Shown in pieces: positions 2,575-58,303 of a DNA stretch of 64,000 nucleotides. The position numbers and the translations under genes are program-made. Positions within the stretch are counted from its first letter, which is position 1; every line of letters begins with the position of its first letter. The notes below the pieces were generated by a model. It made no database searches. It was given only the letters and a program-made list of their open reading frames with translations, and was not told the origin of the DNA. Location of the stretch: the NCBI RefSeq assembly GCF_030028105.1, contig NC_092393.1:31287248-31351247 (forward strand). The letters are read 5' to 3'. Source of the stretch: Mobula birostris (taxonomy: Eukaryota).

Positions 2575-4278
2575 GTATACTTTATGCATGAAATTTTCTT
2601 CCATTATTATAGGCCAAAATAAAATTGCTGATAAAATGCTATGTATATATACAAATTACATATGTATTTGCTCAGATGTCACTTTGTCTCCAGTTATTTT
2701 CAATGCACTGATATCCCAAGCAAAATTTTCTTTGCTTCTAATGATCTTTCTGTAAGAAAATCAGCAGTTTGTTAGTCAAAATTCTTTTCACTGTTCCAAG
2801 AAATGAAGTTGAAGTAATTGCATTTTAAGTGCTATACTCAGTCTTGCCCTTCATAACAATTCATAACAAAATTCTGTCAAGAACATAGTCGAATTTCCAA
2901 GTGGAAGCAAAGATCTTATTGCCATTACATAAAACATTCATTTTAAAATGTTACTATAATAACATTAGACATGCCAGAGGAAACGGCTGAATACCCTGTA
3001 CTGTATTGCCCTCTATTTGGATGAAAGGGCACTGATTTAAATGTAGATTTGAAATTTAAAAAAAATCATTAGGAGTCAATTAACAATAACTTTAATTCTT
3101 GGTAGCCAGTAGGATTATTTCATGTTATTGTGGTCTATTCTAGTCGAGCATGACACCAACAAATTTGTTTGTCAATTATGGAAAAGATGTGCTTTTGCTA
3201 TTCATTAAGATTTTAATTCTAAGGAATAATTATTTTCTTTGGAAGCCTACAGTATAAAAAATAATGCAACATGTAGCAATGTTCATAAGTGATATATTAA
3301 TATTTTAAACAGAAATCTGGTCCATAGTTGTGCTAGCATTAAGTGAAAAGGTTTTGGGTTTAACACCTATTTCAGGTAGAGTTTAACAGATAAAGGCTGA
3401 GTTTTATATAAACCCAAAATGCTGGGGGATCTCAGCAAGTCAGGCAGCACCTATTGAGAATAAAGAGTTGAAATTTTGTACTGAGAAGCTTCATCAGTTT
3501 ATGCAGCTGTTTGATTTTTTTTTCTTTACTCAAAACTTCCAGCTTTGCAAAACCTCTTGTGTATATCAGTCTTCGATAATGTATTGTTGAGAGAAAATGT
3601 CTTTCAAGTGAAGTGCTAAATTGTTGCTGGTTCTGCCCACTAAGATGGATATGTCTCATAAATGGTTCATGCCACTATTTGACCAATATTATCCATAAAC
3701 CAATATTCATACAAGAAATCAACATGTTATCTGGTGCTGTCTTTCATTGCTGTGTTTGATAAGCTGCACAGCTTTCAGTAGTGATCATATTTCACTGAGG
3801 AAATTTCTCATCATTTTTCACTTACGAAAATTACAGATTTTCACTGATATTCTTTCAGAACAACCACCCACAGTTTGTTTCTTCTGATGCAGGAACAAGT
3901 AAGCTGATTTTTTTTCAAAAGGACACTTTACAAACTTTGTTTAAAACAAACACCATTTTCAATTTTGCCACTTCTGTTGGTAATCTGTTCGAGAATTCTA
4001 TAATCCTTTTAGGAAAAGATGCCTGAATTTGCTCAGCTTTTTTGGCATCTTGAACTTTCAGCTTTTTGTTTCTTGCAATCCATAAGTCTGGATATGAATT
4101 TTCTCCTCATCCTGTTCAAAGATTCAAAGAATATTTATTATCAAATTAGGTAGACAGAATGTCCTGTAAGAATGTGAAATCCAAGGTAAATAATCTATAT
4201 GTGTGGACGTGGCTCTCAGAACAGATTTTGACAATCTTTTTCTTCTGCGTTAGTTGTTTATTCAAATGATAACTTTTA

Positions 4279-12184: not shown

Positions 12185-12540
12185 AAAGAAGAGAAGATCT
12201 ACAGATGCTGCAAATCCAAGCAATAGACACAAAATGCTGGAGGAACTCAGCAGGCCAGACAGCATCTGTGGAAAAGAGTATGGTCGATGTTTTGGGCTGA
12301 GACACTTCAGCAGGACGGGAGGAAAAAAAGATGCCGAGTAGATTTAAAAGGTGGGGGGAGGGTAGGTAGAAACACAAGGTGATAGGTGAAACCAGGAGGG
12401 GGAAGTGGTGAAGTAAAGAGCTGGGAAGTTGATTGGTGAAAGAGATACAGGGCTGGAGAAGGGGGAATCTAATAGGAGAGGCAGAAGGCCATGGAAGAAA
12501 GAAGAGAGGGGAGGAGCACCAGAGGGATGTGATGGGTCTT
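12185..12540 (-). mobile_element. Penelope-like 3' fragment with hammerhead motif (12283-12316)
   Basis: Minus strand reads gtc-CTGCTGA-agtgtctcagccc-AAAACATC-gac; pyrimidine-rich 3'UTR like that of the copy at 56167. Confidence 0.75.
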
Positions 12541-12714
12541 TTAAATTTTCAAAACTAGACTTTATTTATGAATCATATACAATAAAGCTAATACAACCAT
12601 TACATTCATGGTGTCATCAAACCAATATGTACTCCTACAAGTCACTGATGCTATATCTCCACTTTCAAAGTGTTTGAGCAACACACACAAAATGCTGGAG
12701 GAACTGTGCAAGCC

Positions 12715-13215
12715 CTTATGCTAGGTTCCCATTTGTTGACTATAGCTCAGCATTTAATGCCATCATTTCCACTGTCCTGATTGATAAGCTACAGAAACTA
12801 GGCCTTTGTACCCCCCTGTGCAATTGGATCTTAAGCTTCCGAACTGGAAGACCACAATCTGTGCGGATTGCTGACAATCAGCACTGGCGCACCTCAGGGT
12901 GCTTAGCCCACTGCTCTACTCTCTCTATACCCATGACTATGTGGCTAGGTATAGCTGAAGTACCATCTATAAACTTGCTGATGATACGACCAGTTTGGTA
13001 AAATCTCAGATGGAGATGAGACGGCGTACGGGAGCGAGATATACCAGCTACTTGAGTGGTGTCGCAACAGCAGCCTTGCACTCAACGCCAGTGATACCAA
13101 AGAGCTGATTGTGGACTTCAGGAAGTGTAAGATGAGGGAATATGAACACATTCTCATAGAGGGATCAGAAATGGAGAGAATCAGAAATTTCAAGTTCCTT
13201 AGTGTCAACATTTCA
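12715..13215 (+). mobile_element. Rex1/Babar-like LINE RT fragment
   Basis: Decayed [18 protein letters not shown](L)ADDT..YLSG and LNASDTKELIVDFRK motifs. Confidence 0.7.
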
Positions 13216-14244
13216 GTGGTTGCACAAAGCTTCAGTGTGTCTATCTGCACGCACCCCTGCAGCCTAGAATATGCCAGTCGGCAGCATTCTGACTACAAAC
13301 ATCTCTCTGTGCTGGAAGACCAACGTTATGGGCAGACTAAAGGGCATTTCTCACCAAGTTGATGATCTTCCAACAGGACTTGATGTCCGTTGGGGTGTGT
13401 GTGTGTGTTACCAGGAACATCCCATAGATCAGAGCGTCAGATCCTCTTGGCAAATGCATAGTCCACATTGAGCCATAATACAACTACATACCAATAAAGT
13501 CTTCCTCTATATTTGGATTATATCATCTATAGGAGTGAGTGTAGGGAATTTGCTTTGCACCGGGAGCAGGATTTACTGCTTTTCCCTGCTCCTTGCCCAA
13601 GGCCAACCGTACTGATGATGTTCAGCCTGGCTAATCAACCTCACACTAGTCCATACTGTGGGCTTTAAAGTTACACCAACAAAATAACAAAGCCAGATTT
13701 TGTGTTTTTTTATTATCCCAATTGTAACAGGAGTTAAAATAAATCACACAATAAATAACAGCAATCTTTCACACTGCCACAGAAGTAGATGTCAGAAAAG
13801 ATGCAGTTTATTCAACTCTCACTACACCCTCTTTAGTGATAATTAGAAATACAATATTTTAGTCATCCTATTGATTATCCAAGACATAAAAATTAACTAT
13901 TATAAATCCTGCTTCTTAATTCAAATTCCAATGTAATGTCATGGTAGCTTGACACTGATTTAGATTTTACTCACGGCTTTTTCACTTCTCGTATCAAACC
14001 TTTCAGGAGCCTGCCCTGCTGTCTGAAACGAATGCATGAAAAGTACCATCATAATTCTATTTTAAATTTGTGTAAAATCATGAGTTTATTGTCAAATCTC
14101 CAAGGAGCATCAATGATGAATATTTCTAATGAAACAAAACCAATTGTATAACAACAAGCATAGGAGCAGTTGAAGGTTTATAACAATTTTGAAGCTGAAA
14201 TTGACTTTTGGTATCACACAGAGGTCACCATTCAAATGTATCTC

Positions 14245-14770
14245 ACTATCTACAAATGTACCTTTCACTTCCCATTCTGATATGTCCATCCCTAGCTTCC
14301 TCCACTGTCGTAATGAGGCCACACTTAGGTTGGAGGAACAACACCTTATATTCTGTTTGGATAGCCTCCAACCTGATGGCATGAACATCGATTTCTCAAA
14401 CGTCCGTTAGTGCCTCCACCCCACTTACCTTCACCATTTCCCATCACCTTGTCCCTCTCTCATGTTACCTCCTTGCCCGCCCATCGCCTCCTCAGGTACT
14501 CCTCCCCCACCCTCTCTTCCTTCTTCCATGGCCTTCTGTCTCTTTCATCAATCAACTTCCTAGCTCTTTGCTTCACCCTTCCCCCTCCAAGTTTCACCTA
14601 TCGTCTGTCATTTCTCCCTCCCCTCCCCCCACCTTTCAAATGTACTCCTCAGCTTTTTTTTAATCCAGTCCTGCCAAAGGGTTTTGGCCTGAAAAGTCGA
14701 CTATACTCTTTTCCATAGATGCTGTCTGGCCTGCTGATTTCCTCCAGAATTTTGTGTGTGTTGCTCACTA
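14245..14770 (+). mobile_element. Penelope-like fragment: GIY-YIG C-terminus, 3'UTR and degenerate hammerhead (14666-14703)
   Basis: SHSDMSIPSFLHCRNEATLRLEEQHLIFCLDSLQPDGMNIDFS; ccagtc-CTGCCAA-agggttttggcct-GAAAAGTC-gact. Confidence 0.8.
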
Positions 14771-14921
14771 TCCATCTTTCTCTTTCATTCGTTTTATCTC
14801 TCTCCCTCAATCTAACAAAATAGGCAATATTTCACTGTAGCAGGAGATCAAACCAAAACCTTGAAATATACTTAAATTGAATTCACATGAATCTTAATTT
14901 ATAAGGCAATGGGCAATATTT

Positions 14922-15122
14922 ACAAACAAATCTGCAAATGCCGGAAACCCAAGCAAAGCACACAAACTGCTGGAGGAGCTCAGCAGGCCAGGCAGCATCT
15001 ATGGAAAATGTACAGTCGACATTTTAGGCCGAGTCCTGCTGAAGGGTCTCAGCCCGAAACATCGACTGTACTTTTTTCCATAGATGCTGCCTGGCCTGTT
15101 GAGTTCCTCCAGCATTTAAAAG
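14922..15122. mobile_element. ~200-bp fold-back Penelope-derived element with hammerhead, 11-bp TSD
   Basis: Inverted arms ~14968-15030 / ~15052-15114. TSD gggcaatattt at 14911-14921 and 15123-15133. Hammerhead on + at 15032-15067. Confidence 0.8.
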
Positions 15123-15592
15123 GGGCAATATTTTATGTCTTTAGAAAACTACCTTGGTATATATCTGAATTTTGAAACAAAGTCTCAACTATCTTTCTGA
15201 AGTGTGTTGAATCAGAGAAACTTACACAGTGATAGAATAAAAATATATTCAGGAAATAACATCAAATATGATATTTCAATGTGACGCTGAAACCAACCAC
15301 TAAATGTCACGTCAATTATAGTGTTACAATGTAGCACATTTATAATCCATACTTCTTTTTAACTAATATACACCATCTTCAATACCTCAACAAAAAATTT
15401 CTATATACTTTTGTTAGTGTTTATATATGCCTCACCTTTAAAAATAATATTTGTCCTTTGTTATTTTAAACTGTAATTTTTAAAAATCTGTTTGAATTTT
15501 TAATATTTTTGAAATTAAGTTATTTACTGTTTGCCCCACTTTTAAAGTGTTTTCTCAATGTCTATTTTTACACAACATTCTCAAGATAAGCT

Positions 15593-15870
15593 CTCAGTGG
15601 CCACTTTACTAGTTAAAGGAGAGGAATTCATCATGGTCTTATGCTGCATTTGCTGAGATACTCAAACCAGCTTGTCTGGTATCAACAATCATTCCATAAT
15701 CAAAAATCACATTTCTTCCCCATTCCGATGTTTGGTCTGAAAAACATCTGAACCTCTTGACCATGTCTATGTTTTTTTATCTATTGAGTTGCTGCCTCAT
15801 GATTGGCTGATTCGATACTTGCTGTAACAAACAGGTGTACAGGTTTACCTAATAAAGTGGCCATCAAGTG
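15593..15870. mobile_element. Tc1-like internally deleted DNA transposon / MITE
   Basis: Imperfect TIRs ctcagtggccacttta.. / ..taataaagtggccatcaagtg followed by TA. Confidence 0.55.
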
Positions 15871-16049
15871 TATACCAGAAACAATTCTTTTCTGAATTTG
15901 TGACTGCATGGGGGGTAGTTCCAGAAAGATGGGACCTAACTTGTCTCATTTGTGTTTAATTCCCCACACCTTCTACAGAAAAATTGTCTTTCATTCATCC
16001 TGTGCCTCTCTTAGATGCTCATTTGTAAACCAGAATTCACCTCATGAAT

Positions 16050-17310
16050 AGCAGCAGCACTTTCTCAATCTATGTCTCTATCTCTGAAGGCAATCTGTCG
16101 ACAGACATCTTTTGTAAACTTACCAATTCCCAAGGTTATCTATACTAAAGCTCTTCCCTCCCTGTCTCCTGTAAAAATGTTATTCCCTTTCTCAATTCCT
16201 TCTCAGGTTCCATCTATTCCCAGGATGCAGTTTGCCATTCCAGGACACCAGAGATGTCCTCCTCCTTCAAAGAACTGGGTTTCCTTTTCTCCACCATTGA
16301 TGCTGCCCTCAACCTCACCTCCTCCATTTCCTGAAAATTTGTGCTCACACCATCTTCCCATCGCCTTAAAAGTGATACAGTCCCTCTTGTCCTTCCCTAC
16401 CACCCCATGAGCCTCCGCATCCAACACATCATCCTCCACAACTTCCACCATCTCCAAAGGCATCCTACCAACAAACATATCTTGACCCCACCTCCACCTT
16501 GCACCAGGATTATACCCTCTATGATCCCTTCATCCATTCATCCCACCCCACTACTCTCCCTCCTACAACTTACTCCTACAAGCAGCCTAAGTGCTACACT
16601 GCCCATTCATCTCCTCCCTCACCTCCATTCAAGGCCCCAAACAATCCTTCCAGGTGAGGCAACACTCATTTCTTAAGGCTGTTTATTGTGTTCATTGTTC
16701 CCAATGTGGCCTCCTTTGGTGAAACCATTGTAAATTAGGGGACCGCTTCATCAAACATCTCTGTTCCACTCACAAGTGGAACTTTCCAGTGGCCAAACAT
16801 TTTAATTCTGATTCCCATTCCCTTTCTGACATGTTTATCTATGGCCTCCTCTTCTGCCAAGATGAGGCCATCCTCAGGGTGGAGGAACAACACCTTATAT
16901 TCTGTCTGAGTAGCTTCCAACATGATGGTATTAATATCGATTTCTCCTTCCAGTAAAAAAAATCCTCCCCCTCCCTTCTTTTATTTCCCACTCTAGCCTC
17001 TTACCTCTTCCCACCTGCTGATTACCTCCTACTAGAATCCCTCTTCCTTCCTTTTCTCCTATGGTCCACTCTCCTCTCCTATCAGATCCTTCCTCTCCAG
17101 CCCTTTATCTTTCCTACCCACCTAGCTCCCCCTAATACTTTCTAGCTATCCTCTTTCACCTCTACTCACCTTCTTATTCTGGTGTCTTCCCCCTTCCTCT
17201 CCAGTCCAGAAGGAGGATGTTGGCCCTAAATAATGACTCTTTATTCATTTCCATAAATGCTGCCTGACCTGCTGAGTTCCTTTGGATTTCCAGCATCTGC
17301 AAACTTTCTT
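16050..17310 (+). mobile_element. Decayed Penelope-like element (RT end, GIY-YIG, 3'UTR)
   Basis: PLVLPYHPMSLRIQHIILHNFHHLQ.., followed by LEEQHLIF-like sequence and the family tail. Confidence 0.75.
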
Positions 17311-18819
17311 CTGTTTATGTTCTTATGATGGTCCTTTTGAGTATAGAAATTTTAATACTAATACTGAAGTGTAGATTACAGGTGTTTAACTAAGGACTCC
17401 ACATTGCTTTTACTATCATGAATCGTGCGGTGACCCTTAACATTACAGTCATGCTGGGGGATTTTTCAAAAAGCCCATCTTTCGTAACCTAAATGTTATG
17501 GTTCTTTCTCTTGCATGCTTACATCATGGCTTTTCATATCTGTCATTATTACCAGAAAAAAAGATAGACAACCAGCCATCAATAGTCTGTACAAGGTTGG
17601 GGTTTTTGACTGAGTAACGAATAATAAAAGATATTTGAAGAAGCTGTCCAAATGAAGTTGTGTTTATTCTCTGCTAAACTGTTGATAAACTTCAGTACTT
17701 GTGATACCATCATTTGTGAAAATACTCTAATTCCATTCTGCATACTTCTCAAATTTATTACGTTACTTTATCGCCAGCCATTAGTAGTTAACATAATCCC
17801 CTTTTCCAATCAGCCTAATTTATTTTGGCTTTTATCTTCATTTGTAAAAGAGGTAACATAGATTATCATTTATGTTCTTCATGAAGATTGAACCATTCTG
17901 TTGCTTATATACTATCTTTAAATACTTTTATTTTCTTCTTGTTAATTTTTTTCTGCACTAAAACATGATCACCAGACATTTAATTCAACGGGATAAATTA
18001 TATGCCACATGTGGCATAAGAACTGTATGATTCAATGTTTTCTTTAGTTTTCTGTCACTGCTGCGGCTGAACTGTGGACTTGAAAATGTTGTGGTTTGCA
18101 GATTTTATACAGTACCTGAGCCACACTCACATTTCTGCTCCAACTGCATAGCAAGCAGTTATATTATTTCTGCACAATTGTTGTTCAGGTGAACCACATT
18201 GGTCAACAATTCAAAGGGTTATATCCAAGAAGTATACTTGAAGAGCAAAATTAAATAGACCATGATAGAAGCATTTTTTCCAGTAAAAAAGCCAATTTTT
18301 TTTACATAAGATTTCTCCACTTGATTTGGACAAAGGCCTTGCTTTTGAGAGGCTAGACTTAGTTTAAGATATTTTTGGAGCAGATACATACGTAGTCAAG
18401 GGTCCTCAATGGATTTGGGATGACCGATCTAGACCCAGGCGGAAAACTTTGTATCTCACCAAGCAGGGCATCCTGATTATTATAGAGACAGAAACCTTAG
18501 CAATAGGGCAGCTAATTACAATACACCACTGAATAGGATAGGGAACACACAACAAAAGAGCATAGGTACAGGCCCCTCAACCCAAAATGTCTATGCTGAC
18601 TTGCTGCTACTTAAAAATGCACCTTTGTCTGCATGTGCAGCATATCTCTCAATTCCCTTCCTATTCATGTGCCTGTCTAAAGTAATTTTTAGATGTTGCT
18701 GCAGATCTACTTCCAACATTTCCCCTGGAAGCATGTTCCAGGGATTTGCCACTTTTGCATAAAAAAATTGTCATATAAATCTCTTTTAAAATGTCTCCTT
18801 CTCACCTTAGTGTAAGAGA

Positions 18820-20580
18820 GAGGCTAGGGAGGATAATGGACCATTAGAAAATGATGCTAAGAGGTAGTAAGTGGGGGGGGGGTGGTGAAACATTGAAATA
18901 GCAGATGAATTGAATAAGTATTTTGCATCAGTCTTTACTGTGGCAGACACACATAATATGGTGGAAGTTCCAAGATGTTAGAGGGCATGAAGTGTGTGAA
19001 GTTCCCATTAGTAGACAGAAGGTTTTTGGGAAACTGAAAGGTCTGAAGGTAGATAAGTCACCTAGACCAGATGGTGTACACCCCAGAGTTTTGAAAGATG
19101 TGGCTGAAGAGATTGTGGAGGCATTAGTAATGGTCTTTCAAGAATCATTAGATTCTGGAATGGTTCCAGAAGACTGGAAAATTGAAAATGTCACTCCTCT
19201 CTTCAAGAAGGAAGGGAGGTAGAAGAAAGGAAACAATGGGCCAGTTAGTCTTGACCTCAGTATTTGGGAAGACATTGAAGTTGATCATTAAGGATAAAGT
19301 CTCAGGGTACTGTGAGGCACAAGATAAAATAGGCCATAGTCAACATGCTTTCCTCATTGGAAAATCTTCCCTGACTAATCTGTCGAAATTCTTTGAAGTA
19401 GTAACAAACAGGATAGACAAAAGAGAATCAGTTAATGTGATTTTCAGAAGGCCTTTGACAAGGTGTCTCACATGAGGCTGCTGCACAGGCTGTGAGTCTG
19501 TGGTATTATAGGAAAGATTCTGGCATGGATTAAGCAGGGCTGATTGGCGGGAAGTAAAGAGTGGGAATAAAGGGAGCCTTTTCTAGTTGGCTACCAGTAG
19601 CTAGTGATGTTCCACAGGGTATGTGTTGGGTCTGTTTCTTTTTATGTTATGTGTCAATGATTTGGATGATATGATTCCTGGCTTTCCTGCAAAGTTTGCA
19701 GATGATATAACAGCTGGAGGGGCAGGTAGTTTTGAAGAAGTAGAGGCGCTACAGAAGGATTTAAGCAGATTAGGAGAATGGGCAAATAAATGGCAGGTGG
19801 AATACAGTGTCTGGAAGTGTTTGGTCATGCACTTTGGTAGGAGGAGTAAATGGAGAGAAATCTCAAAAATCATAGGCACAAAGGGACTTGGAAGTCACAG
19901 TGCAGGATGTCCTACAGGTTAACTTGCAAGTTGAATCTGTGGTGAGGAAGGCAAATGCAATGCTAGCATTCTTTTCAAGAGGGCTGGAATATAAAAGCAA
20001 GGATGTAATGTTGAGACTGGTAAGGCCTCACAGAGTATTGTGAGCAGGTTCAGTCCCCTTATCTTAGAAAGGATGTGCTGAAACTGGAGATGATTCCGAG
20101 GGTTCAAAGGAGGTTCTGGAAAATGATTCCAGGAATGAATGGCTTGTCATATGAAGTGCATCTGATGGCTCTAGCCCTGTATTCACTAGAACTCAGAAGA
20201 ATGAGGGTGACCTCATTGAAACCTATTGAATGGTGAAAGGCCTTGATAGAGTGGATTTGGAGAGGATGTTTCCTATGGTGGGAGGGTCTAAGACCAGAGG
20301 ACATGGCCTCTGACTAAAGGGACATCCTTTTCTCTACAGAGATAAGGAGGAATTTCTTTAGCCAGAGGGTGGTGAATCTGTGGAATTCTTGCATGTAAGC
20401 AGCTGTGGAGGCCAACTTTTTATGTATCTTTAAGGCAAACATTGATAGATTCTTGATTGGTCAGGACGTGAAGGGATGTAGGGTGAAGGCAGGAGATTGA
20501 GGCTGAGGAAAATTTCACGATGAAATGGCAGAACAGTCACAACGGGCCAAATGGCATAATTCCTCTCTTATATTTTATGG
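18820..20580 (+). mobile_element. Decayed CR1 LINE (RT region)
   Basis: KSPRPDGVHPRVLK..DWKIENVTPLFKK; KFADD; multiple stops and frameshifts. Confidence 0.85.
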
Positions 20581-20589
20581 TCTTAATGC

Positions 20590-21016
20590 GATTCCTTCTA
20601 ATATTTGATAATTCCACCTGATTAAAAAAATGACTCTGGATACTTCAGTTGGATCACTCCTCAGCTTCTTATACTCAAGAAAAAACAATCCAAGTTTGTG
20701 CAACCTCTCGCCTAAGGCTAATACTGTCAAATCCAGGCAATATCCTGATGAACCTCTTCTGCAAAGCTTCCGCATCCTTTATGTAATACAGTGCCCAGAC
20801 CTGCACACAATACTTCTAAATTTGGCCTAACTATGGATATACATAGCTGTAATGTGATTTCCTAACTGTTGTATTCAATACCTCACCAATAAAGGTAAGT
20901 ATTTTGTGTGCATTCTTTACCACCCTATGTACTGGTGTTTCCCCTGATGTGAACTATGGACACACACGCCCAGGTCCTTCTGTACATTAGTGCTCCTAAG
21001 GGTCCTACCATTTACA
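20590..21016 (-). mobile_element. Old CR1 3' fragment
   Basis: Minus strand resembles YxxNGRxL..QKDLGV and RPNLE.CVQ.W segments. Confidence 0.6.
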
Positions 21017-22073
21017 GTAAACTTTCATCTAAAAATTTGATTTTTGGACAAAATTTTATTACATGGATTAAATTGCTATATTCATGCCCCATTGCTTCTG
21101 TTTTGACCAATTCTCAGCAATCCCAACCGTTTAACTTTAAACGTGGCACCTGACAAGGGTGCCCTTTAAGTCCCTCACTTTTTGATCTGTCCATAGAGCC
21201 ATTGGCGATTGCGTTTCGTAGCTGTGCTGAATTGACGGGGATTCGGGAAGGGGGGTGCAGTTGGTGTTGAGCATAAAGTTTCTCTTTATCCTGATGATCT
21301 TTTACTTTTTATGTCAAATCTGACTTCCTCTTTACCCCCAATGTTTTCACTTCTTAATAAGTTTAGCCAGATTTCCGGATACAGACTTAATTTACATAAG
21401 AGCAAACTTTTCCCAATTAACAGAGAAGCACAAATATTAAAATTTCATAACCTCCCTTTTAAAATAGTAAATAATCAATTTACTTACCTCGGTATTACAG
21501 TAACAAGGAGTTTTAAGTGTCTTTTTTTGAGAAAATTTCACTAATCTTTTAAATTATACAAAACAGAGTTTGGCACAGCGGTCACCCCGTCCGTGTCTCT
21601 GGTAGGTCGAATTAATGTCGTTAAAATGTATATCCTTCCTAAACTTTTATACTTATTTCAATCTATACCAAATTTTATTCCTAAAGCTTTTTTTGATTCA
21701 TTAGATTCTATTATTTTGTCCTATCTGTGGAAGGGCAAATGCTCCAGACTTAATAAAGTTCACCTTCAAAAACCTAAAGGGGAAGGTGACATGGCCTTGC
21801 CTAATTTTCGCTTATATTACTGGGCAGCCAATATACGTTGTCTTACTTTTTGGTCTTTCTTTTATAATCAGTCTGACTGCCCAAAATGGGTGGCAATGGA
21901 GTTGAACTCTATAAGGATTTCTCCATTTCCATATTTCTTGGATCTGCACTTCCTTGTCATTTGCCTAAATGAATTATTAATCCTCTCATTAGACATATCC
22001 TGAGAATATGGGCTCAGTTCAGAAAATATTATGGTCTTCACGGTTTCTCTCTCCCTAGTCCTACCATTTACAT

Positions 22074-22823
22074 GGTAAATGGTAGGGCATTGAAGTTTGC
22101 AGTAGAACAGAGGGATCTGGGAATAATGGTGCATAGTTCCCTGAAGCTGGAATCTCATGTGGATAGGGTGGTGAAGAAAGCTTTTGGTATGCTGGCCTTT
22201 GTAAGTCAGAGCATTGAGTATAGGAGTTGGGATGTAATGTTGAAATTGTATAAGGCATTGGTAAGGCCAAGTTTGGAGTATTGCGTACAGTTCTGGTCAC
22301 CGAATTATAGGAAAGATGTCAACAAAATTGAGAGAATACAGAGGAGATTTACTAGAATGTTGCCTGGGTTTCATCTTCTAAATTACAGAGAAAGGTTGAA
22401 CAAGTTGGGTCTTTACTCTTTGGAGCGTAGAAGGTTGATGGGGAGACTTGATAGAGGTATTTAAAATTATGAGGGGGATAGATAGAGTTGACGTGGATAG
22501 GCTTTTTCCATTGAGAGTGGGGGAGATTCAAACAAGAGGACATGAATTGAGAGTTAAAGGACAAAAGATTAGGGGTAACATGAGGGGTATCTTCTTTATT
22601 CAGAGAGTGGTAGCTGTGTGGAACGAGCTTCCAACTGAAGTGGTTGAGGCAGGTTCGATGTTGTTATTTAAAGTTAAATTGGATAGATATATGGGCAGGA
22701 AAGGAATGGAAGGTTATGTGCTGAGTGCAGGTCGGTGGGACTAGGTGAGAGTAAGAGTTTGGCACGGACTAGAAGGGCCAAGATGGCCTGTTTCCTTGCT
22801 GTAATTGTGATATAGTTATATGG
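22074..22823 (+). mobile_element. CR1 3' fragment inserted into L1
   Basis: ORFs 22072-22464 and 22448-22744 ([13 protein letters not shown]..); putative TSD ttacat. Confidence 0.85.
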
Positions 22824-23142
22824 TTACATAACCATCTTTTCCAACCTTCTATGCAAGACTTAACATTTCATCTCTGGTACAGAAAGGGCATTAGGCGCTT
22901 TGAAGATCTTTTCATAGATAATCGCTTTGCAAATTTTGAACAACTGCAAAGTTTAACCTACCTAATACTCATTATTTTTTTTTTTTTTTTAGACATTTTC
23001 AAATTAGGCATTTTATTAACCCTTTAATACCAAACTTTCCTGAGATGACCGAAAAAAAGGTTGTGGACTTGTTTTTTTGTATAAGTCCATCAGATTAAGG
23101 TTTATTATCTACTATTCACGATAAGTTAGTGACCTTGAGGCA

Positions 23143-23345
23143 AACAACAGGAATTCCGAAATGCTGGAAATTCAAGCAACACACATCAAAGTTGCTGGTG
23201 AACGCAGCAGGCCAGGCAGCATCTCTAGGAAGAAGTACAGTCGACGTTTCAGGACTGACAAAGGGTCTTGGCCTGAAACATCGACTGTACTTCTTCCTAG
23301 AGATGCTGCCTGGCCTGCTGTATTCACCAGCAACTTTGTGTATTG
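23143..23345. mobile_element. 203-bp fold-back Penelope-derived element with hammerhead, 12-bp TSD
   Basis: 66-bp arms 23188-23253 / 23272-23337 with ~3 mismatches. TSD gaccttgaggca at 23131-23142 and 23346-23357. CTGACAA..GAAACATCGACTG on +. Confidence 0.85.
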
Positions 23346-24869
23346 GACCTTGAGGCATGCCCCCTTTGATAAAATTAGAACTGCCTGGGAGCATGATTTA
23401 AATATTTCTCTGTCCGACGAGGTTTGGGATTCAATTCTTAATTCAGTTAACTCAACCTCTTTAGGTGCTCGTCACTGGCTTTTGCAGTTCAAGGTCGTAC
23501 ATAGGGTTCATATGTCTAAAACTAAATTATCATGGTTCTATCCTGATATTAGTCCTTTTTCTGACAAGCGTAAAGGGGTCAAGGCTTCTCTTATCCATAT
23601 GTACTGGGCTTGTCCTAGTTTGGAGGAATTTTGGAGAGAAGTCTTTTTAACTTTATCCTATATTCTTAATTGTCACTTAGAACCTAACCCTTTGATTGTT
23701 CTTTTAGGCACCTCAGGTGAAGTTGACATGCATATGAGTCTGGCTAAATACTGAACATTATCTTTTTCCTCCCTTCTGGCTAGACGTTTAGTTCTTAGGT
23801 GGAGAGATGTTGCCCCACCCACTCATGCTCAATGGCTTACAGACATTATATCCTGCTTAGACCTGAAAAAATTCATTATTCACTTCTTAATTTGGACATA
23901 AAGTTCCATAAGGTGTGGGGAACTTTTCTTGAATACTTTCATAATTCCTCTTTAGATTAAAGGTTTATCCTCCTTTTTTTTGTATTTTATTCCCCTACTT
24001 TCAGCTTTTTTTCTGATACAAATTTACGTTTTTTTTCATGTGAAATATATTACAGTTTAGGTAGTAAGCAATATACTTTTTTATATGTACAGCTCTGGTG
24101 ACAAAAGCTCTGTTTAAGTTTTCTCTACATCAAAATGGTTGGCTTGGAATTGCGTAGTGGGAGGGTGGGGAGGATAGTAACTTTATATGATTTTATTTTG
24201 GGTGCTTTTTCTTTATTGTTATGAATTGAATATTGACATGTTTGTTTTGCGCTGTATGAATCTCTTCTTTGCTGGTGTTTTTTTTTCTTGTATTGTAGAA
24301 ACTCAAAAAAGTTAATTAAAAAAAACTCCTAGTGTTGACTGCCCAAAGTGCAACACCTCACAACTATAGATTGAACTGTCTGCCATTTCTCTGCCCACAT
24401 TTCCATGTGGTCTAAATCCTCCTTAATACTTTGACAACCTTCTTCACTATCCACAATTCTGACAACGTCTGCATCATCTACAGACTTACTAATCAGCCCA
24501 ACAATACATTCCTCCAGATCATTTATCTACTTATCTCAAACAACAAGTCCTGCACTGATCCACTGGCTACAGACATCATCTAGTTCTGTATTAGTAAAGA
24601 ACAAGTACAATCACCATTACAACTATTTCCAAACTGCATTCCAACTCCAGCATAACAGCATGAGGGAAACCAGCCTTCTGCCTATGGACTTTGACCATAC
24701 TTCTTGCTGCTTCAGTAAAGCTACGAACATAACTTTAATAAAACCATTAGAAGTACAGATATGGAATAACATATAAACATAAAAACCAGCATATATTTAC
24801 AAAATAAATAGTATTACAAATAGCTATTTAAATAGCAAACTTCGAAAACAAGGAGAATTATATCAGAAT

Positions 24870-25805: not shown

Positions 25806-26095
25806 ACAAGAGAAGATCTGCAGAAGCTGCAAATCCAAGCAACATACGGAAAATGCTGGAGGAATGCAGTAAAGCCAGGTATCATCTATGGAAAAGGGTA
25901 TTGTTGACATTTCGGGCCAAGACCTTTCAGCAGGACTAGAGAAAAGCAAATGAGGAGTAAATTTAAATCTCCTTTTAAATCTACTCCTCATCTCTAGTCC
26001 TGCTGAATGGTCTCGGCCTGAAATGATGACAGTACTCTCTTCTGTAGATGCTGCCTGGTCTGCTGATTTCCTCCAGCATTTTGTGTGTGTGTGTT
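25806..26095. mobile_element. Fold-back Penelope-derived element with two oppositely oriented hammerhead motifs
   Basis: Inverted arms centred near 25970. Minus motif ctagtc-CTGCTGA-aaggtcttggccc-GAAATGTC; plus motif ctagtc-CTGCTGA-atggtctcggcct-GAAATGAT. Confidence 0.7.
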
Positions 26096-26784
26096 GTAAG
26101 CATTACGGATGGTTAATAGAAGGAAGTGAACGTGCTAACATGGTTGCTTTGAGGTTGCATGAATTATGAACAACAGCACGGGCAGTTTAGAAATGAATAG
26201 GAAGCTTTATGAGCACTGTCATTTGGACAGCGATGTCGATGAACAGTTCAGAATGAATATGACTCTTTAATGAATTAGAGGAACCATGCAGAAACAGGTA
26301 CAGCATTAAATTCGGAGTACCAGCTGGTATTGGGATTGGAATATTGTTGCCACATGTACTGAGATACAGTGAAGTATTGTCTTGCATACAGATCAGATCA
26401 TGACAAAGTGCATTGAGCTAGAACAAGATAAAAACAAAAAGGTGCAGAGCTGCATTGAAAATACAGTGCAGGTACTTTTAGAGACAGAGAAATTAGATTT
26501 AAAAATGCAGAATAATTATAATAGAAGTAATGAGTTGATCTGTAGAGTGGAGTTTGTAACAGGACATCATGCTCCAGTGCAATCTTGCAATCATTGCAGT
26601 AAGTTGCAACATGCCAAACATAAGAATTACAAGGCACAGTCTGCTTAATCTTGCACTTCCTCCCTCTATTACTAGGAATTGAACTGGCAACATTTCACTA
26701 CACTCAGTCTCAAGTTTATCCTTACTGAGGTCAGGAAACGCAAACCTGCACACTGTATTCCAGATGCAGTCTCACCAGGTCTTT

Positions 26785-32029: not shown

Positions 32030-32169
32030 TTGAAGGTGACGGTTATGCTCATTTTCAACTGCAAACATTTATTCATGATACCACAGAGGAATTGCTTAAT
32101 ACTGTTTACTGGAGGTTGCAGCATTGTAACGATATGCGACAAAAATCTTGATAACCAGTATCTTTGTGA

Positions 32170-33610
32170 TTCAAGCAACACGCACAAAATGCTGGAGGAA
32201 CTCATCAGTCCAGACAGCATCTGTGGAAAAAAGTGCAGTTGATGTTTCGGGCCAAGACCCTTCGGCAAGACTGGAGAAAAAAAAGATGAGGAGTAGATTT
32301 AAAAGTTGGGAGAGGGGAGAGAGAAACTTGTTACATACACCTGTTAGGGTGCATTCTCCATTTACCTTATAAGGTAACCATCGCCTTCAGCCAGGAGCAG
32401 ATGTCATCAGGTGGTTCCCAACCTTCACCGAGTGTTTCGATCCTTAACCACAACACTCTCCAGTGGGTGGGCCAGCAGTGGTGGCCAAATCACTGCCCAT
32501 CTGCTCCTGGCTTCCAGCTTCCCTCCTCTCACCTACTCCAGGTCCAACAAGAGGCTCGTTCTGCCTCTTCCCCCATCCTACGAGCTGCTTGTTTTTTGCT
32601 ACTTTCATCCAGGCCCAGTTCTGACAACAATCGCTATGCTGATTTGGCTGGGAAACCTCTGCAGCCGATCTCCACAGGGAACAACCATGCCTGCCATCCC
32701 TTGTCTTTACACTCCTAAACTAAGGGCTGGTACTTTAAGGCCATTCTCTCGTGGGCCTCTTCCCATCCCTCCTCCCACAGCACAGTCACCTCAACCAGAA
32801 TTATTTTCTTGACTTCAGTTGACCACAGTACAATGTCCGGGCATAGGGTTGTGTGCACCACATCCGAGAATTGCAACCTCCTTCCCACATCGACCCTCAT
32901 ATCCCAGGACCTGGCTGTTAGCAGCAGATTGGGCTTTGGTTGTTTGGTTACGAAAGGCATAGCTCCCTCTTTGATGAAGGTGATGGCCTTCCTCAAATCT
33001 GTGCCAGCCGCCCTCTTCTTGCATCTCTCCCGCTCTAGTGTGTCAGCAAGAGCCAGAAGCACCTTATCATAGTGCCATCTATACCGTCCTTGAGTTAGAG
33101 CTGTTTTACACCCAGACAGTATATGAGCCAGTGACCCCTTTTGACCACAGAGCCTACAGTTCAGGTCCTCTCTCATCCCTCATGTGTATAGATGTAATGG
33201 TGAAGGAAGGGTGTCATGCACAGATCTATCCAAGACCCTTCAGCAAGACTGGAGAAAAAAAAATGAGGAATAGATTTAAAAGTTGGGAGAGGGGAGAAAG
33301 AAACAACATGATAGGTGAAACTGGGAAGGGGAGAGATGAAGTGAAGAGCTTGGAAGTTGATTGGTGAAAGATACAGAGATGGAGAAGGACAAGTCCAAGC
33401 AGAGAGAACAGAAGGTCATGGAAGAAAGAAAAGGTGGGAAGAGCACCAGAGGAAAGGGCGGGGGGTGGGCGCAGGGTGTTGCCATTACCGTAAGTTTGAG
33501 ATATCAATGTTCATGCCATCAGGTTGGAGTCTACCGAGACAGAATTTAAGTTGTTGTTCCTCTAATCTGAGTGTGGTCTCATCACAACAGTGGAGGTGGC
33601 CATGGATTGA
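32170..33610 (-). mobile_element. Penelope-like 3' fragment split by a HERO insertion
   Basis: LEEQQL..SLP.GMNID-type sequence at ~33500-33600; family tail at 32170-32270 with the motif ccagtc-TTGCCGA..GAAACATC. Confidence 0.75.
32328..33229 (-). mobile_element. HERO-like (RLE-endonuclease) non-LTR retrotransposon 3' fragment
   Basis: DTLPSP..CRLCGQKGSLAHILSGC (zinc knuckle), LCPDIVLW..ILVEVTVLWEE (PD..(D/E)xK-like RLE), GWQAWLFPVEIGCRGF, then a 3'UTR. Confidence 0.8.
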
Positions 33611-34612
33611 CTGAAAAACTGAGTTGCTTTTGGATACTAAATCTATGTTTACCCAAAATTAAGTGTGACATTTCAGTCAATTATCAAAACATGCAACAAT
33701 TAAAATGGATCTTCATTACTGCCATTCCCAATTATCATGGTTTTGTTTAGTTACCTTGTTACGTCAATCTGTTACGTCAATCTATTGACCCACTCTATCC
33801 CAAACTTGCAAACTAAAGTTCCACAAATTGAATGATTAATAAGCCATCATTGTATACTGTCCTGCACCACAATGTTCTCTTAACTTTTGTTTCTGCTATC
33901 AGCTGCTTGCTTGTCATAAAATAACTTTTAGCCATGTTAAATACATCTTACATTTTCACCACAAACTTTGCTGCTTTCTCAATTATATCCCTTATATCCC
34001 ACCCTCCCTTTCACTTGTTTTATTCCTCCTCTTGCCTTGATTCACACACATCTCACCCCACCCAATTATACCATATTTAAGGATGCTCTCATTGGATGAC
34101 TAATGTCTTTCCTTTATTTAAGAATGGGAGCTACCGGCCAGTGAGCCTTGAATCTGCAGAGGAGAAACAACTGGAAAAAGTCCTAAGGCATTTGGAAAAG
34201 CAGGAACTGGTCAAAAATGGTCAGCTTGACCTCATGAGGGAGAAATTCTTCCCAACTCATTCAATTAAGTTTATTGAGGAAGTAACAAAGGAGATGATAA
34301 AGAAGGGTGATGGATGTTGTGTGCATTGACTTTAATAAGGCAATTGAAAAGGAGCTGCCTTGTAGGCTAGTTTTGTCATGACCACAGATTTAGCAGTGCA
34401 GCAGACTTGGCAATTGCACTTGTGAATATGCACATGTCAGCTATTTATCATTTCGTTATGGAAGTATTTAACTCCCTTCTTTTCATTGTTGTGCTTGTTG
34501 AGACTTAAACAAAACATAGCAATGTTACTCTGCCTGCTCGCATTCAGCCTTGCCTGAGAAAGAAGGGACTGTCGAGTTGACTAACGCTGAAGGTCAGCTG
34601 TATTTATTTTAT

Positions 34613-55710: not shown

Positions 55711-56166
55711 GCTTTCTAACTTCTCTCAGTAACGTGTCAACCAGAAGACTTAATACATAGTTGGCACCATGCATTCCTGGTCTCATTCTACCAGAGATAG
55801 TATGATCTCTTCTCCACTTTCTCTGCAATTTATCACTAACTCGCTTGTATTTATTCACACTTCCACCAAAGAGTCCTCAACCTGAAACCATAACTCTGCT
55901 GCCTGAACAATTCTTCTGTTTCTAATTTATTCTGTAAAGTTTTTCAAGGTTGCAACAGGGTATTGAATTATCCAACCAGAACTGAATCGATTAAATGAAC
56001 AGTAAACATCCAATTTGAGCATCTTTGTGATGGGCAAAGAATTCAAGATATTATGAAGCGAGGATAATTCTGCTTGGGATTTACACCTTCCAAAGTAATG
56101 GTCTCTGGTCATAGACAATATTGTTTTACATCATTTGCATGAGTTGATAGACATTCATCTAGCATA

Positions 56167-57260
56167 AACACGAGGAATTCTGCAGGTGCTGGAAATTCAA
56201 GCAACGCACATCAAAGTTGCTGGTGAACGCAGCAGGCCAGGGAGCATCTGTAGGAAAAGGTACAGTCGATGTTTTGGGCCGAGACCCTTCGTCAGGACTA
56301 AGTGAAGGAAGAGCTAGCAAGAGATTTGAAAGTGGGGAGGGGGAGGGGGAGATCCAAAATGATAGGAGAAGACAGGAGGGGGAGGGATGGAGCCAAGAGC
56401 TGGACAGGTGATTGGCAAAAGGGTATGAGAGGATCATGGGACAGGAGGCCCAGGGAGAAGGAAAAGGGGGAGGGGGGAAAAAACCCAGAGGATGGGCAAG
56501 GGGTATAGTCAGAGGGACAGAGGGAGAAAAAGGAGAAAGAGAGAAAGAATGTGTGTATATAAATAAATAACAGATGGGGTACAAGGGGGAGGTGGGGCAT
56601 TAGCAGAAGTTAGAGAAGTCAATGTTCATGCCATCAGGTTGGAGGCTACCCAAACAGAATATAAGGTGTTGTTACTCCAACCTGGGTGTGGCTTCATCTT
56701 TACAGTAGAGGAGGCCGTGAATAGACGTATCAGAATGGGAATGGAATGTGGAATTAAAATGTGTGGTCACTGGGAGATCCTGCTTTCTCTGGCGGACAAA
56801 GTGTAGGTGTTCAGCAAAATGATCTCCCAGTCTGCATCGGGTCTCACCAATATATAGAAGGCCACATCGGGAGCACCAGGCGCAGTATATCACCCCAGCC
56901 GACTCACAGGTGAAGTGCCGCCTCACCTGGAAGGACTGTCTGGGGTCCTGAATGGTGGTAAGGAAGGAAGTGTAAGGGCATGTGTAGCACTTGTTCCGCT
57001 TACAAGGATAAGTGCCAGGAGGGAGATCAGTGGGGAGGGATGGGGGGGGATGAATGGACAAGGGAGTCGCGTAGGGAGCGATCCCTGCAGAAAGCAGAGA
57101 GAGGGGTCAGGGAAAGATGTGCTTAGTGGTGGGATCCCACTGGAGGTGGCAGAAGTTACGGAGAATAATATATTGGACCAGGATGCTGGTGGGGAGGTAG
57201 GGGAGGACCAGGGGAACCCTATTCCTAGAGGGGTGACGGGAGGATGGAGTGAGAGCAGAT
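56167..57260 (-). mobile_element. Penelope-like element 3' part: Cys-rich linker + GIY-YIG endonuclease (ORF 56672-57061), 3'UTR, hammerhead
   Basis: CKRNKCYTCPY..VIYC..CSRCGLLYIGETRCRLGDHFAEH..HFNS. Motif tagtc-CTGACGA-agggtctcggccc-AAAACATC-gactg at 56263-56299. Candidate TSD catctagca at 56156-56164 and 57262-57270. Confidence 0.88.
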
Positions 57261-58303
57261 CCATCTAGCAGCCCACTTAAGGCAGGAATAGAGAATGATC
57301 GTAATAAATCCAAGGGACTGTGGGTGACTTCTGTTCATAGGTCAAACCATGCTGACTGCTCACAATTCAAAGAAAGCTCCAGCAGGTAATAAAAACATGT
57401 TTTCCACTCACAAAAATATTAAAATAATTTGTTATTTCACTAGTGCAGATAAACAGCTGACAGTGCATAAGACACCAACTTGATAATCTAGATTTATAAA
57501 TTTCTATGGTAAAATGTGGGCAGAAGGACTCATTTATGGCACTTAATTGCAAGAAATCAAGGAGATCAAATTTAAAAACAGATAATGATAGAACAATAAT
57601 ATATTGTATAGTTATATTATTTTAAGAATAATTGTTTGGAAAAGAGTGAGAATGCATAACTGAATAAAGAACTAATAGAAATAAAGAAATAAAAGAGGGG
57701 AGGAGAGGATGGCGGCGCAACGCCATTGAGTGGCTAAAACTTCCTCCTTTGTCAGAACAGAATGATGCTTTCCTAGAGGAATATTATGATCAAAGCAGTT
57801 GATAAAGAGGAGATTTGGAGAAAGGTACAGCTCAGTTGTTAATACTTCTTCATTTAGGTCAGCCTCGAGCACAAAAATCTAGTCAGCCTCCTCCTCCTAT
57901 AGCCCTGAGTGAATACTGCACTTCCACAAGTTTTGCTCTCTGAAGAAAAGATATTAGAGAGAAAACTATGAAGGGAGTAACAGCATTAATAATTTAGATT
58001 GATGACACTTCATCAGCAAAGAGTTACTCACTGAATTGTGCAGCAATGTGCTTGATCATGCTTTGCTTTATGAAAAATGGTAGAAACTATATTAGACAGA
58101 AAATTTCACACTTTTCATAACAGCCATTTATACGTGGGTTGACAAGTGGTGTCAATGAGTAATTCAAAAGGTAGGTAAGTGGATGTGAAAGTACCAGTGC
58201 ATTATTCTGTCAATCACCTTATTTTCCTGAAATCTGAGATTGGAAGAAGATGCTTGCAGGCAGCTTGAATGACGCTGTTTCAATTAAAATGCAATCCAAC
58301 TTA

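What the first reader, a model, noticed from the sequence alone, without database searches (positions are those of the whole stretch)
14922..23345. Two independent ~200-bp fold-back, hammerhead-bearing retroelements with their own TSDs (retrozyme/MITE-like Penelope derivatives)
Seen: the elements at 14922-15122 and 23143-23345 are both ~200 bp and both form long hairpins. Each has a clean TSD (11 bp gggcaatattt; 12 bp gaccttgaggca). In both, the inversion junction falls inside the ribozyme: the left arm stops in stem II and the right arm restarts 2-4 nt before CUGANGA. They belong to two different subfamilies (tails aaatgctggaggaactcagc vs aaagttgctggtgaacgcagc), so the same architecture arose at least twice. 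Established: Penelope-like elements carry minimal hammerheads in their pLTRs and often have inverted 5' pLTR segments. Inference: these are either a non-autonomous class of short palindromic ribozyme RNAs mobilised by the PLE RT/GIY-YIG, or the products of a reproducible ribozyme-centred template switch.
Basis: partly seen in the sequence, partly recalled or inferred. Interest (0 to 1): 0.75.

Follow-up and report, generated by a model that had tools for sequence, protein, structure and literature searches.

The report
Head-to-head Penelope retrotransposon stubs
The two 200-base hairpins are real, but they are ordinary dead leftovers of a very abundant Penelope-like jumping gene, each laid down in one event as two shortened copies facing each other, not a new self-contained ribozyme element.

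Summary
Both elements exist as described. E1 (14922-15122) and E2 (23143-23345) fold into long hairpins (z -12.7 and -18.2). They have perfect 11- and 12-bp target duplications, their inversion junctions lie inside a minimal hammerhead motif, and they come from two subfamilies.

They are 5'-truncated ends of a Penelope-like element (PLE). Longer copies in the window carry the GIY-YIG ORF end, a ~270-nt UTR and the hammerhead. Each hairpin shows the published standard PLE insertion form: an inverted 5'-truncated copy next to a direct one, one TSD, and a 34-42-nt "tail" at one end only.

A third fold-back (25806-26096) has its junction about 30 nt upstream of the ribozyme. E1 and E2 have different junctions, and each matches its own subfamily's long copies. 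This points to independent one-off events, not a propagating hairpin family. Neither hammerhead core is intact. E1 is also present in a related species.

Two small regularities remain unexplained. Three of 10 insertions start at hammerhead positions +1 to +5, just downstream of a conserved TATA-like box. In all three fold-backs the tail-less arm reaches further 5'.

This scan had already reached the same verdict on other DNA of this genome. A genome-wide junction table could not be made.

The parts
14911..14921 (.). E1 left target-site duplication, gggcaatattt
   Evidence: Perfect 11-bp repeat of 15123-15133 that abuts the element.
14922..15033 (-). E1 left arm: an inverted PLE 3' end. It runs from hammerhead position about +19 to the full 3' terminus and includes a 42-nt tail (14922-14963).
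   Evidence: Aligns on the minus strand to long copies (A 240-344, B 475-585). The terminus matches those of copies 12185, 25806, 17319 and 56160.
15032..15117 (+). E1 right arm: a direct PLE 3' end running from hammerhead +1 to the tail-less end. It contains the only complete hammerhead motif in E1 (15032-15071), which is damaged (CTGCTGA, ACATC).
   Evidence: About 1000 contigs per run carry the canonical upstream sequence before 15032, and about 2500 carry TGTGTGTGTTGCTT.. behind 15117.
15118..15122 (.). Five extra bases (aaaag) between the E1 right arm and the TSD
   Evidence: Not present in canonical copies, which continue with tgtgtg.
15123..15133 (.). E1 right target-site duplication
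23131..23142 (.). E2 left target-site duplication, gaccttgaggca
   Evidence: Perfect 12-bp repeat.
23143..23253 (-). E2 left arm: an inverted PLE 3' end of subfamily B. It runs from hammerhead about +22 to the full terminus, with a 34-nt tail (23143-23176).
   Evidence: Minus-strand match to B 487-595 at 89%; alignment of the arms.
23251..23345 (+). E2 right arm: a direct, tail-less PLE 3' end running from hammerhead +1 to +5. The hammerhead motif at 23251-23290 is damaged (CTGACAA, ACATC).
   Evidence: Plus-strand match to B 466-549 at 88%; motif alignment.
23346..23357 (.). E2 right target-site duplication
25806..26096 (.). Third fold-back of the same family. Left arm 25806-25967 (-) has a 34-nt tail. 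Right arm 25968-26096 (+) is tail-less. The junction lies about 30 nt upstream of the hammerhead, in the TTTAAA box.
   Evidence: It is older (arms about 80% alike) and no clean TSD was found.
56150..57320 (-). Long subfamily-B copy: GIY-YIG ORF end (56672-57061), UTR, hammerhead (56260-56299) and a tail-bearing 3' end. This is the reference copy for E2.
   Evidence: Pfam GIY-YIG gives only E 0.13, but the motifs VIYCAWC..LLYIGET..R..EH are read directly from the ORF.
12185..12540 (-). Subfamily-A 5'-truncated copy with a tail. This is the reference copy for E1.
14255..14767 (+). Tail-less copy with the ORF end (..LEEQHLIF..LQPDGMNIDFSNFR*), UTR and hammerhead at 14667-14706
3415..3500 (-). 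Single ~85-bp stub whose 5' end lies at hammerhead +5 (..cttcatcag)

Best explanation
E1 and E2 are two independent, dead-on-arrival insertions of an abundant Penelope-like retrotransposon, from two subfamilies. Each was made in a single integration event in the element's usual head-to-head form.

Shown:
- Each element has one TSD, two inverted arms that were essentially identical at birth, and a 34-42-nt tail on one arm only.
- The tail-less arm reaches 13-21 nt further 5' than the tail-bearing arm.
- The arms meet at a 2-nt overlap in E1.

Inferred mechanism: the PLE protein cut both target strands 11-12 bp apart, and both 3'-OH ends primed reverse transcription at the two adjacent internal start sites of the RNA. 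This gives one arm with the tail and one without. Both cDNAs ended about 85-110 nt in, inside or at the 5' edge of the hammerhead. The two cDNA ends were then joined by a template jump or microhomology, which produces the hairpin.

The elements carry no promoter and no ORF. Each has a single ribozyme motif that now lacks core residues. They are inert relics.
For: Family identity:
- Long copies in the window carry a GIY-YIG-type ORF end followed by a UTR and a min-hammerhead on the same strand.
- The fold of copy 56254-56302 gives stems I and II.

Architecture matches the literature:
- An inverted 5'-truncated copy adjacent to the direct one, with a 30-40-bp tail often at only one end (PMC8557442).
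- A 31-bp tail on one of the inverted pLTRs, and TSDs of 8-10 bp (PMC3846280).
- A purified PLE protein cuts and extends both strands and starts RT at two adjacent internal sites that bracket the tail (PMC11167929).

Here the tails are 42, 34 and 34 nt and sit on one arm only in all three fold-backs.

Independence of the two events:
- E1 and E2 have different junction coordinates and belong to different subfamilies.
- A third fold-back has its junction elsewhere.
- Differences between the arms are mostly CpG-type decay.

Abundance and age:
- More than 120,000 contigs per run align to the family.
- Contigs of a related species span both outer ends of E1 with 2-3% differences.
Against: - No copy in the window reaches the RT domain, so the PLE assignment rests on the EN end, the hammerhead and the architecture.
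- Pfam GIY-YIG is below threshold (E 0.13), and Rfam sees no hammerhead.
- If the two cDNAs were primed independently, arms of unequal length would be expected. All three fold-backs have nearly equal arms in template coordinates, so some coupling exists that the simple model does not explain.
- A genome-wide count of copies sharing either junction could not be made.
Confidence: 0.85

Rival explanations
1. A propagating non-autonomous family: a ~200-nt palindromic, ribozyme-bearing RNA (retrozyme-like or MITE-like) is transcribed from a hairpin master and copied in trans by the PLE protein.
For: On the minus strand each hairpin ends in a complete tail-bearing PLE 3' terminus, so a transcript of it would be a valid template. 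Notes of this scan list further fold-backs of 199-203 bp in the same genome; these are leads only.
Against: - E1 and E2 differ in junction and subfamily, and each is closest to long copies of its own subfamily.
- No second copy of either junction occurs in 64 kb that holds 10 insertions.
- The arms were identical at birth, with CpG-type differences only.
- There is at most one hammerhead, which is damaged, and no promoter region.
- The structure is the published de novo product.
Confidence: 0.05
2. Self-priming (snap-back): one cDNA folded back on itself, helped by the G+C-rich stem II hairpin of the hammerhead, and copied itself to give the second arm.
For: - The arms are nearly equal, with small loops of 14, about 18 and 5 nt.
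- E1 has a 2-nt overlap at the turn.
- Palindromes at inverted PLE junctions have been read as self-priming (PMC3846280).
Against: Each arm holds PLE sequence that the other lacks. The tail is in the left arm only, and hammerhead +1 to +18 is in the right arm only. Neither arm can therefore be a pure copy of the other, and the loop polarity fits only the strand whose first arm lacks the tail.
Confidence: 0.1
3. The hairpins were longer or unequal at birth, and cellular trimming of palindrome centres later made them short and symmetric. The junction position would then say nothing about reverse transcription.
For: This would explain equal arms at three different positions without any coupling of the two RTs. 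It rests on general knowledge of palindrome instability and was not tested here.
Against: - The single, non-inverted stub at 3415-3500 also starts at hammerhead +5.
- E2's arms are 96% alike and E2 has a clean TSD, so it looks little altered.
- E1 is already present in the related species; both outer ends are spanned there, though its centre was not seen.
Confidence: 0.07
4. Assembly artefact or chance palindromes.
For: PLE inverted structures are known to trouble assemblies (PMC8557442).
Against: - Contigs from separate runs of two species span both outer junctions of E1.
- Fold z-scores are -12.7 and -18.2.
- Both TSDs are perfect, and the host ORF is restored across E2's empty site.
Confidence: 0.01

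Closest known systems
Canonical EN+ Penelope-like elements (Penelope/Poseidon/Neptune type) in their inverted-pLTR or head-to-head insertion form
   Same: - A C-terminal GIY-YIG ORF end followed by a UTR with a minimal type I hammerhead.
- Heavy 5' truncation, with an inverted 5'-truncated copy abutting the direct one.
- A 30-40-nt tail at one end only, and one TSD of about 10 bp around the whole unit.
   Different: Both arms are cut down to about 85-110 nt, so the unit is nothing but two 3' ends. The RT domain was not seen in this window.
Non-LTR (metazoan) retrozymes
   Same: Derived from the PLE pLTR region and contain a type I hammerhead motif (bioRxiv 10.64898/2026.07.22.740005).
   Different: Retrozymes are tandem direct repeats with a hammerhead in every unit, so that unit-length RNA can be cut out and circularised. 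E1 and E2 are inverted repeats with one damaged motif.
L1 twin-priming inversions
   Same: Both target 3' ends prime cDNA, giving an inverted 5' part within one TSD, joined by microhomology (from my own knowledge of Ostertag and Kazazian 2001).
   Different: In L1 the inverted part comes from RNA upstream of the direct part. Here both arms copy the same 3' segment, starting at two neighbouring start sites.
MITEs
   Same: Short, with terminal inverted repeats, a TSD and a hairpin-forming shape.
   Different: The ends are not symmetric (tail on one side only), the TSD length varies (11 and 12 bp), the arms are retroelement 3' ends, and there is no DNA-transposon parent.

Membership tests
Penelope-like element (EN+) | C-terminal GIY-YIG endonuclease in the element's ORF | tested here: inconclusive
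   ORF 56672-57061(-) reads ..CKRNKCYTCPY..GVIYCAWCSRCGLLYIGETRCRLGDHFAEHL..; Pfam PF01541 gives only E 0.13, 13 bits against a cut-off of 22.6. The motifs are clear by eye, and the ..LEEQHLIF..PDGMN end is seen in copy 14255-14403.
Penelope-like element (EN+) | PLE/telomerase-like reverse transcriptase | not testable with these tools
Penelope-like element (EN+) | Insertion architecture: 5' truncation, inverted 5' copy, one-sided 30-40-nt tail, one TSD | tested here: met
   E1, E2 and the fold-back at 25806-26096 have tails of 42, 34 and 34 nt on one arm only. TSDs are 11 and 12 bp. Compared with PMC8557442 and PMC3846280.
Minimal PLE hammerhead (min-HHR, type I) | Core CUGANGA ... GAAA ... 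[quoted passage not shown] | tested here: inconclusive
   The subfamily-B copy at 56260-56299 has AGTC CTGACGA A GGGTCTCGGCCC AAAAC ATC GACT, with stems I and II in the MFE fold. The subfamily-A copies share C at core position 6 (CTGCYGA). E1 has CTGCTGA/ACATC and E2 has CTGACAA/ACATC, so neither has an intact core. Rfam gives no hammerhead hit at E<=10. Cleavage was not tested.
Non-LTR retrozyme | Two or more direct (tandem) units, each with a type I hammerhead, able to release a unit-length RNA | tested here: not met
   The arms are inverted, not tandem. There is one complete motif per element; the left arm keeps only the 3' half on the other strand.
MITE | Symmetric terminal inverted repeats reaching both ends, with a TSD of family-specific fixed length | tested here: not met
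   The left end carries 34-42 nt with no counterpart at the right end. TSDs are 11 and 12 bp.

The most novel reading that the evidence does not exclude
The ~200-bp size may not be chance. In this ray's PLE the pLTR promoter may start transcription at the first base of the hammerhead. A conserved TTTAAA box lies at -31 to -26, and an Inr-like CCA(+1)GTCC lies at the motif's edge. Short pLTR-only RNAs would then be copied to their 5' end.

If both target strands prime on one such RNA at the two neighbouring start sites, the trailing, tail-bearing RT follows the leading one. It stops one enzyme footprint behind it and jumps onto the leading cDNA.

The ~100-bp stubs and ~200-bp hairpins would then be full-length copies of a minimal PLE template, and the one-sided tail of PLEs would have a simple cause.
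Probability: 0.2. Interest if true: 0.45.

Novelty: already known. Interest (0 to 1): 0.18.

Why it matters
As found, it matters little. These are dead copies of a repeat present in very large numbers in ray genomes, in the shape the literature gives for Penelope-like insertions.

The practical value is for annotation. Such hairpins draw false microRNA-precursor hits (E2 matches plant MIR444 at E 0.00066, below threshold), and they look like novel ribozyme elements to a naive reader.

The two regularities seen here could inform how PLEs integrate, which is still poorly understood. These are starts clustered at the hammerhead's upstream edge, and the tail-less arm always reaching further 5'. 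In this window they rest on only 3 of 10 events and 3 of 3 events respectively.

Tried and rejected
- Rfam at gathering threshold on the whole window, and at E<=10 on 12000-33800, found no hammerhead family, only sub-threshold hairpin look-alikes.
- Read laying on 14150-15300 with two runs of the source species, one of a relative and one possible RNA run confirmed abundance, E1's orthologue and the truncation points. Its joint and loose-end tables are cut to the best-supported rows. Most 'opposite strand' joints are artefacts of having both orientations in the reference. All runs are contigs, so no junction distribution, RNA ends or small RNAs could be read.
- A word search with the 129-aa EN fragment gave 3 unnamed eukaryote proteins without contigs.
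- A metagenome scan for an 18-nt core motif gave 120 loci. None contained the element, so all are chance hits.
- No paralogous empty site for E1, E2 or the third fold-back exists in the window.
- No TSD was found for the inverted pair 12185-12540 / 14255-14767, for the third fold-back or for stub 3415-3500.
- The hammerhead cleavage site (GTC|GAC) was rejected as the junction. The arms run 10-30 nt past it.
- A pure snap-back was rejected because each arm has sequence the other lacks.
Full report
**Observation**

| | E1 | E2 |
|---|---|---|
| Coordinates | 14922-15122 | 23143-23345 |
| Length | 201 bp | 203 bp |
| Inverted arms | 44 nt at 93% plus 32 nt at 78% | 67 nt at 96% |
| Fold as single-stranded DNA | -67.4 kcal/mol | -87.1 kcal/mol |
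| Shuffled mean | about -24 | about -25 |
| z-score | -12.7 | -18.2 |
| TSD | gggcaatattt | gaccttgaggca |

- None of 200 shuffles reaches either fold energy.
- Both TSDs are perfect and abut the elements.
- E2 sits inside the ORF2 end of an L1/Tx1-like LINE. Removing E2 and one TSD copy gives an unbroken host frame through the join (..DKLVTLRHAPFDKIRTAWEHDLNISLSDEVW..). This is good evidence for a clean insertion.

**What the family is**

A 16-nt core of the arms occurs 12 times in the window, against 0.5 expected. BLAST with longer copies finds ten insertion events:

| Copy | Strand | Note |
|---|---|---|
| 3415-3500 | - | single stub |
| 12185-12540 | - | subfamily A, with tail |
| 12675-12714 | - | 40-nt fragment |
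| 14255-14767 | + | tail-less |
| E1 | both | fold-back |
| 16799-17319 | + | long copy |
| E2 | both | fold-back |
| 25806-26096 | both | a third fold-back |
| 32169-32327 plus 33230-33611 | - | interrupted by another element |
| 56150-57320 | - | subfamily B |

The long copies show the following order on one strand:
- the end of an ORF with a CCHH finger and GIY-YIG motifs (..GVIYCAWCSRCGLLYIGETRCRLGDHFAEHL....LEEQHLIF..PDGMN..);
- about 270 nt of UTR;
- the motif AGTC CTGAYGA A GGGTCTCGGCCC GAAAC GTC GACT;
- about 60 more nt to the 3' end.

Pfam gives GIY-YIG only at E 0.13, and no copy reaches the RT. The Penelope-like assignment therefore rests on the EN motifs, the ribozyme motif and the insertion architecture.

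The motif has the hallmarks published for minimal PLE hammerheads (PMC4209133):
- helix I of 4-5 bp and helix II of 4 bp;
- a G10.1-C11.1 pair;
- a palindromic ACGU in place of helix III.

The MFE fold of the best copy gives stems I and II. Rfam's models do not see it, even at E<=10.

The family is enormous. More than 120,000 contigs per run align to the 1.15-kb stretch, both in the source species and in a relative. Notes of this scan call the genome giant manta ray.

**Anatomy of the hairpins**

Take the A of AGTC as hammerhead position +1. The predicted cleavage site is then between +32 and +33.

- **E1.** The left arm is the minus-strand copy. It runs from the complete 3' terminus inwards to about +19, in the stem II loop. 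The right arm is the plus-strand copy. It starts at +1 to +3 and shares AG with the left arm. It ends at ..ccagcattt, which is 42 nt short of the terminus that the left arm has, and is followed by five extra bases.
- **E2.** The left arm reaches about +22. The right arm starts at +1 to +5 and ends 34 nt short of the full terminus.
- **Third fold-back.** The plan is the same, with a 34-nt one-sided extension. Its arms meet about 30 nt upstream of the hammerhead, in a TTTAAA sequence, with a 5-nt loop.

Contigs from the genome confirm E1's right-arm limits. About 1000 contigs per run continue with the canonical upstream sequence before 15032. About 2500 continue with TGTGTGTGTTGCTT.. after 15117.

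Neither hairpin has an intact catalytic core:
- E1 has CTGCTGA. The C at core position 6 is shared by five subfamily-A copies. E1 also has ACATC.
- E2 has CTGACAA and ACATC. Both changes are CpG decay of CTGACGA and ACGTC.

The left arms keep only the 3' half of the motif, on the other strand.

**Comparison with what is known**

The literature describes exactly this form.
- PLE insertions are heavily 5'-truncated and often have an inverted 5'-truncated copy directly adjacent. [quoted passage not shown]
- In a rotifer Penelope, an inverted pLTR completes the insert, which is flanked by a 9-bp TSD. A 31-bp tail sits on one of the inverted pLTRs (PMC3846280).
- A purified anole PLE protein cuts and extends both target strands. 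It starts reverse transcription at two adjacent internal sites, and the interval between those sites is the tail. Hammerhead cleavage is not needed for insertion (PMC11167929).

E1, E2 and the third fold-back are therefore the minimal version of the standard product: two 3' ends, one with the tail and one without, inside one TSD.

They are not retrozymes. Retrozymes are tandem direct repeats with a hammerhead in each unit. They are not MITEs either, because the ends are asymmetric and the TSD length varies.

**One-off events or a propagating family?**

Five points favour one-off events.
- E1 and E2 differ in junction coordinates and in subfamily.
- Each is closest to long copies of its own subfamily. 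The E1 right arm is 90.6% identical to 12185-12540, and the E2 arms are 88-89% identical to 56150-56760.
- E2's arms are more alike (96%) than either is to any other copy, and their differences are CpG-type. The arms were therefore identical at birth.
- No second copy of either junction occurs in the window.
- The third fold-back joins elsewhere.

E1 is old. Contigs of the related species span its left end (14738-14981, 7 differences) and its right end (15094-15300, 4 differences).

I could not count junction-sharing copies genome-wide. A metagenome scan returned only chance hits.

Earlier follow-ups in this scan reached the same verdict on other pieces of this genome. I treat those as leads, not as evidence.

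**Mechanism**

Each arm holds PLE sequence that the other lacks. The tail is in the left arm only, and +1 to +18 is in the right arm only. Neither arm can be a plain copy of the other, so a pure snap-back of one cDNA is excluded. Both arms must have been RNA-templated, which fits the published extension of both target strands.

The strand geometry also fits. The plus-strand 3'-OH at the end of the left TSD continues into antisense (cDNA) sequence. So does the minus-strand 3'-OH at the right TSD.

Two regularities go beyond the textbook picture.

- *Arm reach.* In all three fold-backs the tail-less arm reaches further 5' than the tail-bearing arm, by 13-21, 17-21 and 3 nt, and the arms are nearly equal in template coordinates. 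Independent priming on two RNAs would not predict this. A model that does: both primers use one RNA, one at each start site. The trailing, tail-bearing RT follows the leading one and, when the leader stops, jumps onto the leader's cDNA. This is inference from n=3, with a chance of 1 in 8.
- *Start positions.* The leading 5' ends of E1, E2 and the single stub at 3415-3500 fall at +1 to +5. That is three of ten events in a 5-nt window, roughly p<0.001 against a smooth truncation curve, though the test is post hoc.

These ends are not at the cleavage site, and they lie on the far side of the folded motif, which argues against a simple structural roadblock. An alignment of long copies shows a conserved TTTAAA at -31 to -26 and CCA(+1)GTCC at the edge. 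The consensus of about 1000 clipped contigs per run upstream of 15032 shows the same. A transcription start at the hammerhead's first base, with cDNA run-off on short pLTR transcripts, would explain the peak. This is untested.

**Verdict**

The retrozyme/MITE-like reading is not supported, and the 'reproducible switch' reading survives only as a possible truncation hot spot. The elements are ordinary, inert, head-to-head Penelope stubs. Interest is low.

Noticed in passing
25806-26096: A third fold-back of the same PLE family. It has a 34-nt tail on the left arm only and a 5-nt loop. The junction lies in the TTTAAA box about 30 nt upstream of the hammerhead. The arms are about 80% alike, and no clean TSD was found.
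   Followed up: yes
12185-14767: A tail-bearing minus-strand copy (12185-12540) and a tail-less plus-strand copy (14255-14767) face away from each other, with 1.7 kb between them. The gap includes a 40-nt PLE 3' fragment (12675-12714) fused directly to a LINE RT fragment (12715-13220). This could be a head-to-head PLE insertion carrying foreign DNA, as noted elsewhere in this genome, but no TSD was found.
   Followed up: partly
14817-14832: A third copy of E1's target motif (AAAATAGGCAATATTT) lies 89 bp upstream of the left TSD. It matches the right end AAAAGGGGCAATATTT at 14 of 16 positions, including the AAAA that I scored as extra bases. The 79 bp in between are single-copy. Unexplained.
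   Followed up: partly
14636-14671; 12313-12350(-); 32268-32305(-); 56295-56332(-): A conserved TTT(T/C)AAAT box lies 25-32 nt upstream of the hammerhead's first base, which itself sits in an Inr-like CCAGTCC. This may be the pLTR core promoter.
   Followed up: partly
3415-3500: A single, non-inverted ~85-bp PLE stub whose 5' end is at the C of CTGATGA. It is the only copy in the window with a literal CTGATGA box.
   Followed up: partly
12306-12317, 14667-14680, 15032-15045, 25926-25940, 25996-26010, 32260-32272: Subfamily-A copies share C at hammerhead core position 6 (CTGCCGA, decaying to CTGCTGA or CTGCCAA). By the usual rules this should cripple cleavage, yet the subfamily is abundant.
   Followed up: partly
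21311-23760: E2 lies in the ORF2 C-terminal region of an L1/Tx1-like LINE, which is itself interrupted at about 22072-22744 by the 3' end of a CR1/L2-like LINE. This is a nested repeat landscape.
   Followed up: partly
32252-33304: The PLE copy 32169-33611 is split by another element. The split is flanked by a ~76-bp duplication of PLE sequence that ends inside the hammerhead (..GGGTCTTGG|ATAGATC at about 33230). This is the subject of another finding.
   Followed up: no
23201-23325; 25906-26026; 14997-15086: The PLE hairpins draw sub-threshold Rfam hits to microRNA precursor families (MIR444 at E 0.00066, MIR2118, mir-2007). This is a false-positive trap for miRNA annotation.
   Followed up: yes
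15080-15117 and equivalents: The most conserved stretch of the family (..CCATAGATGCTGCCTGGCCTGCTGA..) contains an ATG that is open through the tail ([18 protein letters not shown]..). By analogy with other PLEs, it may be the start of the element's ORF.
   Followed up: no
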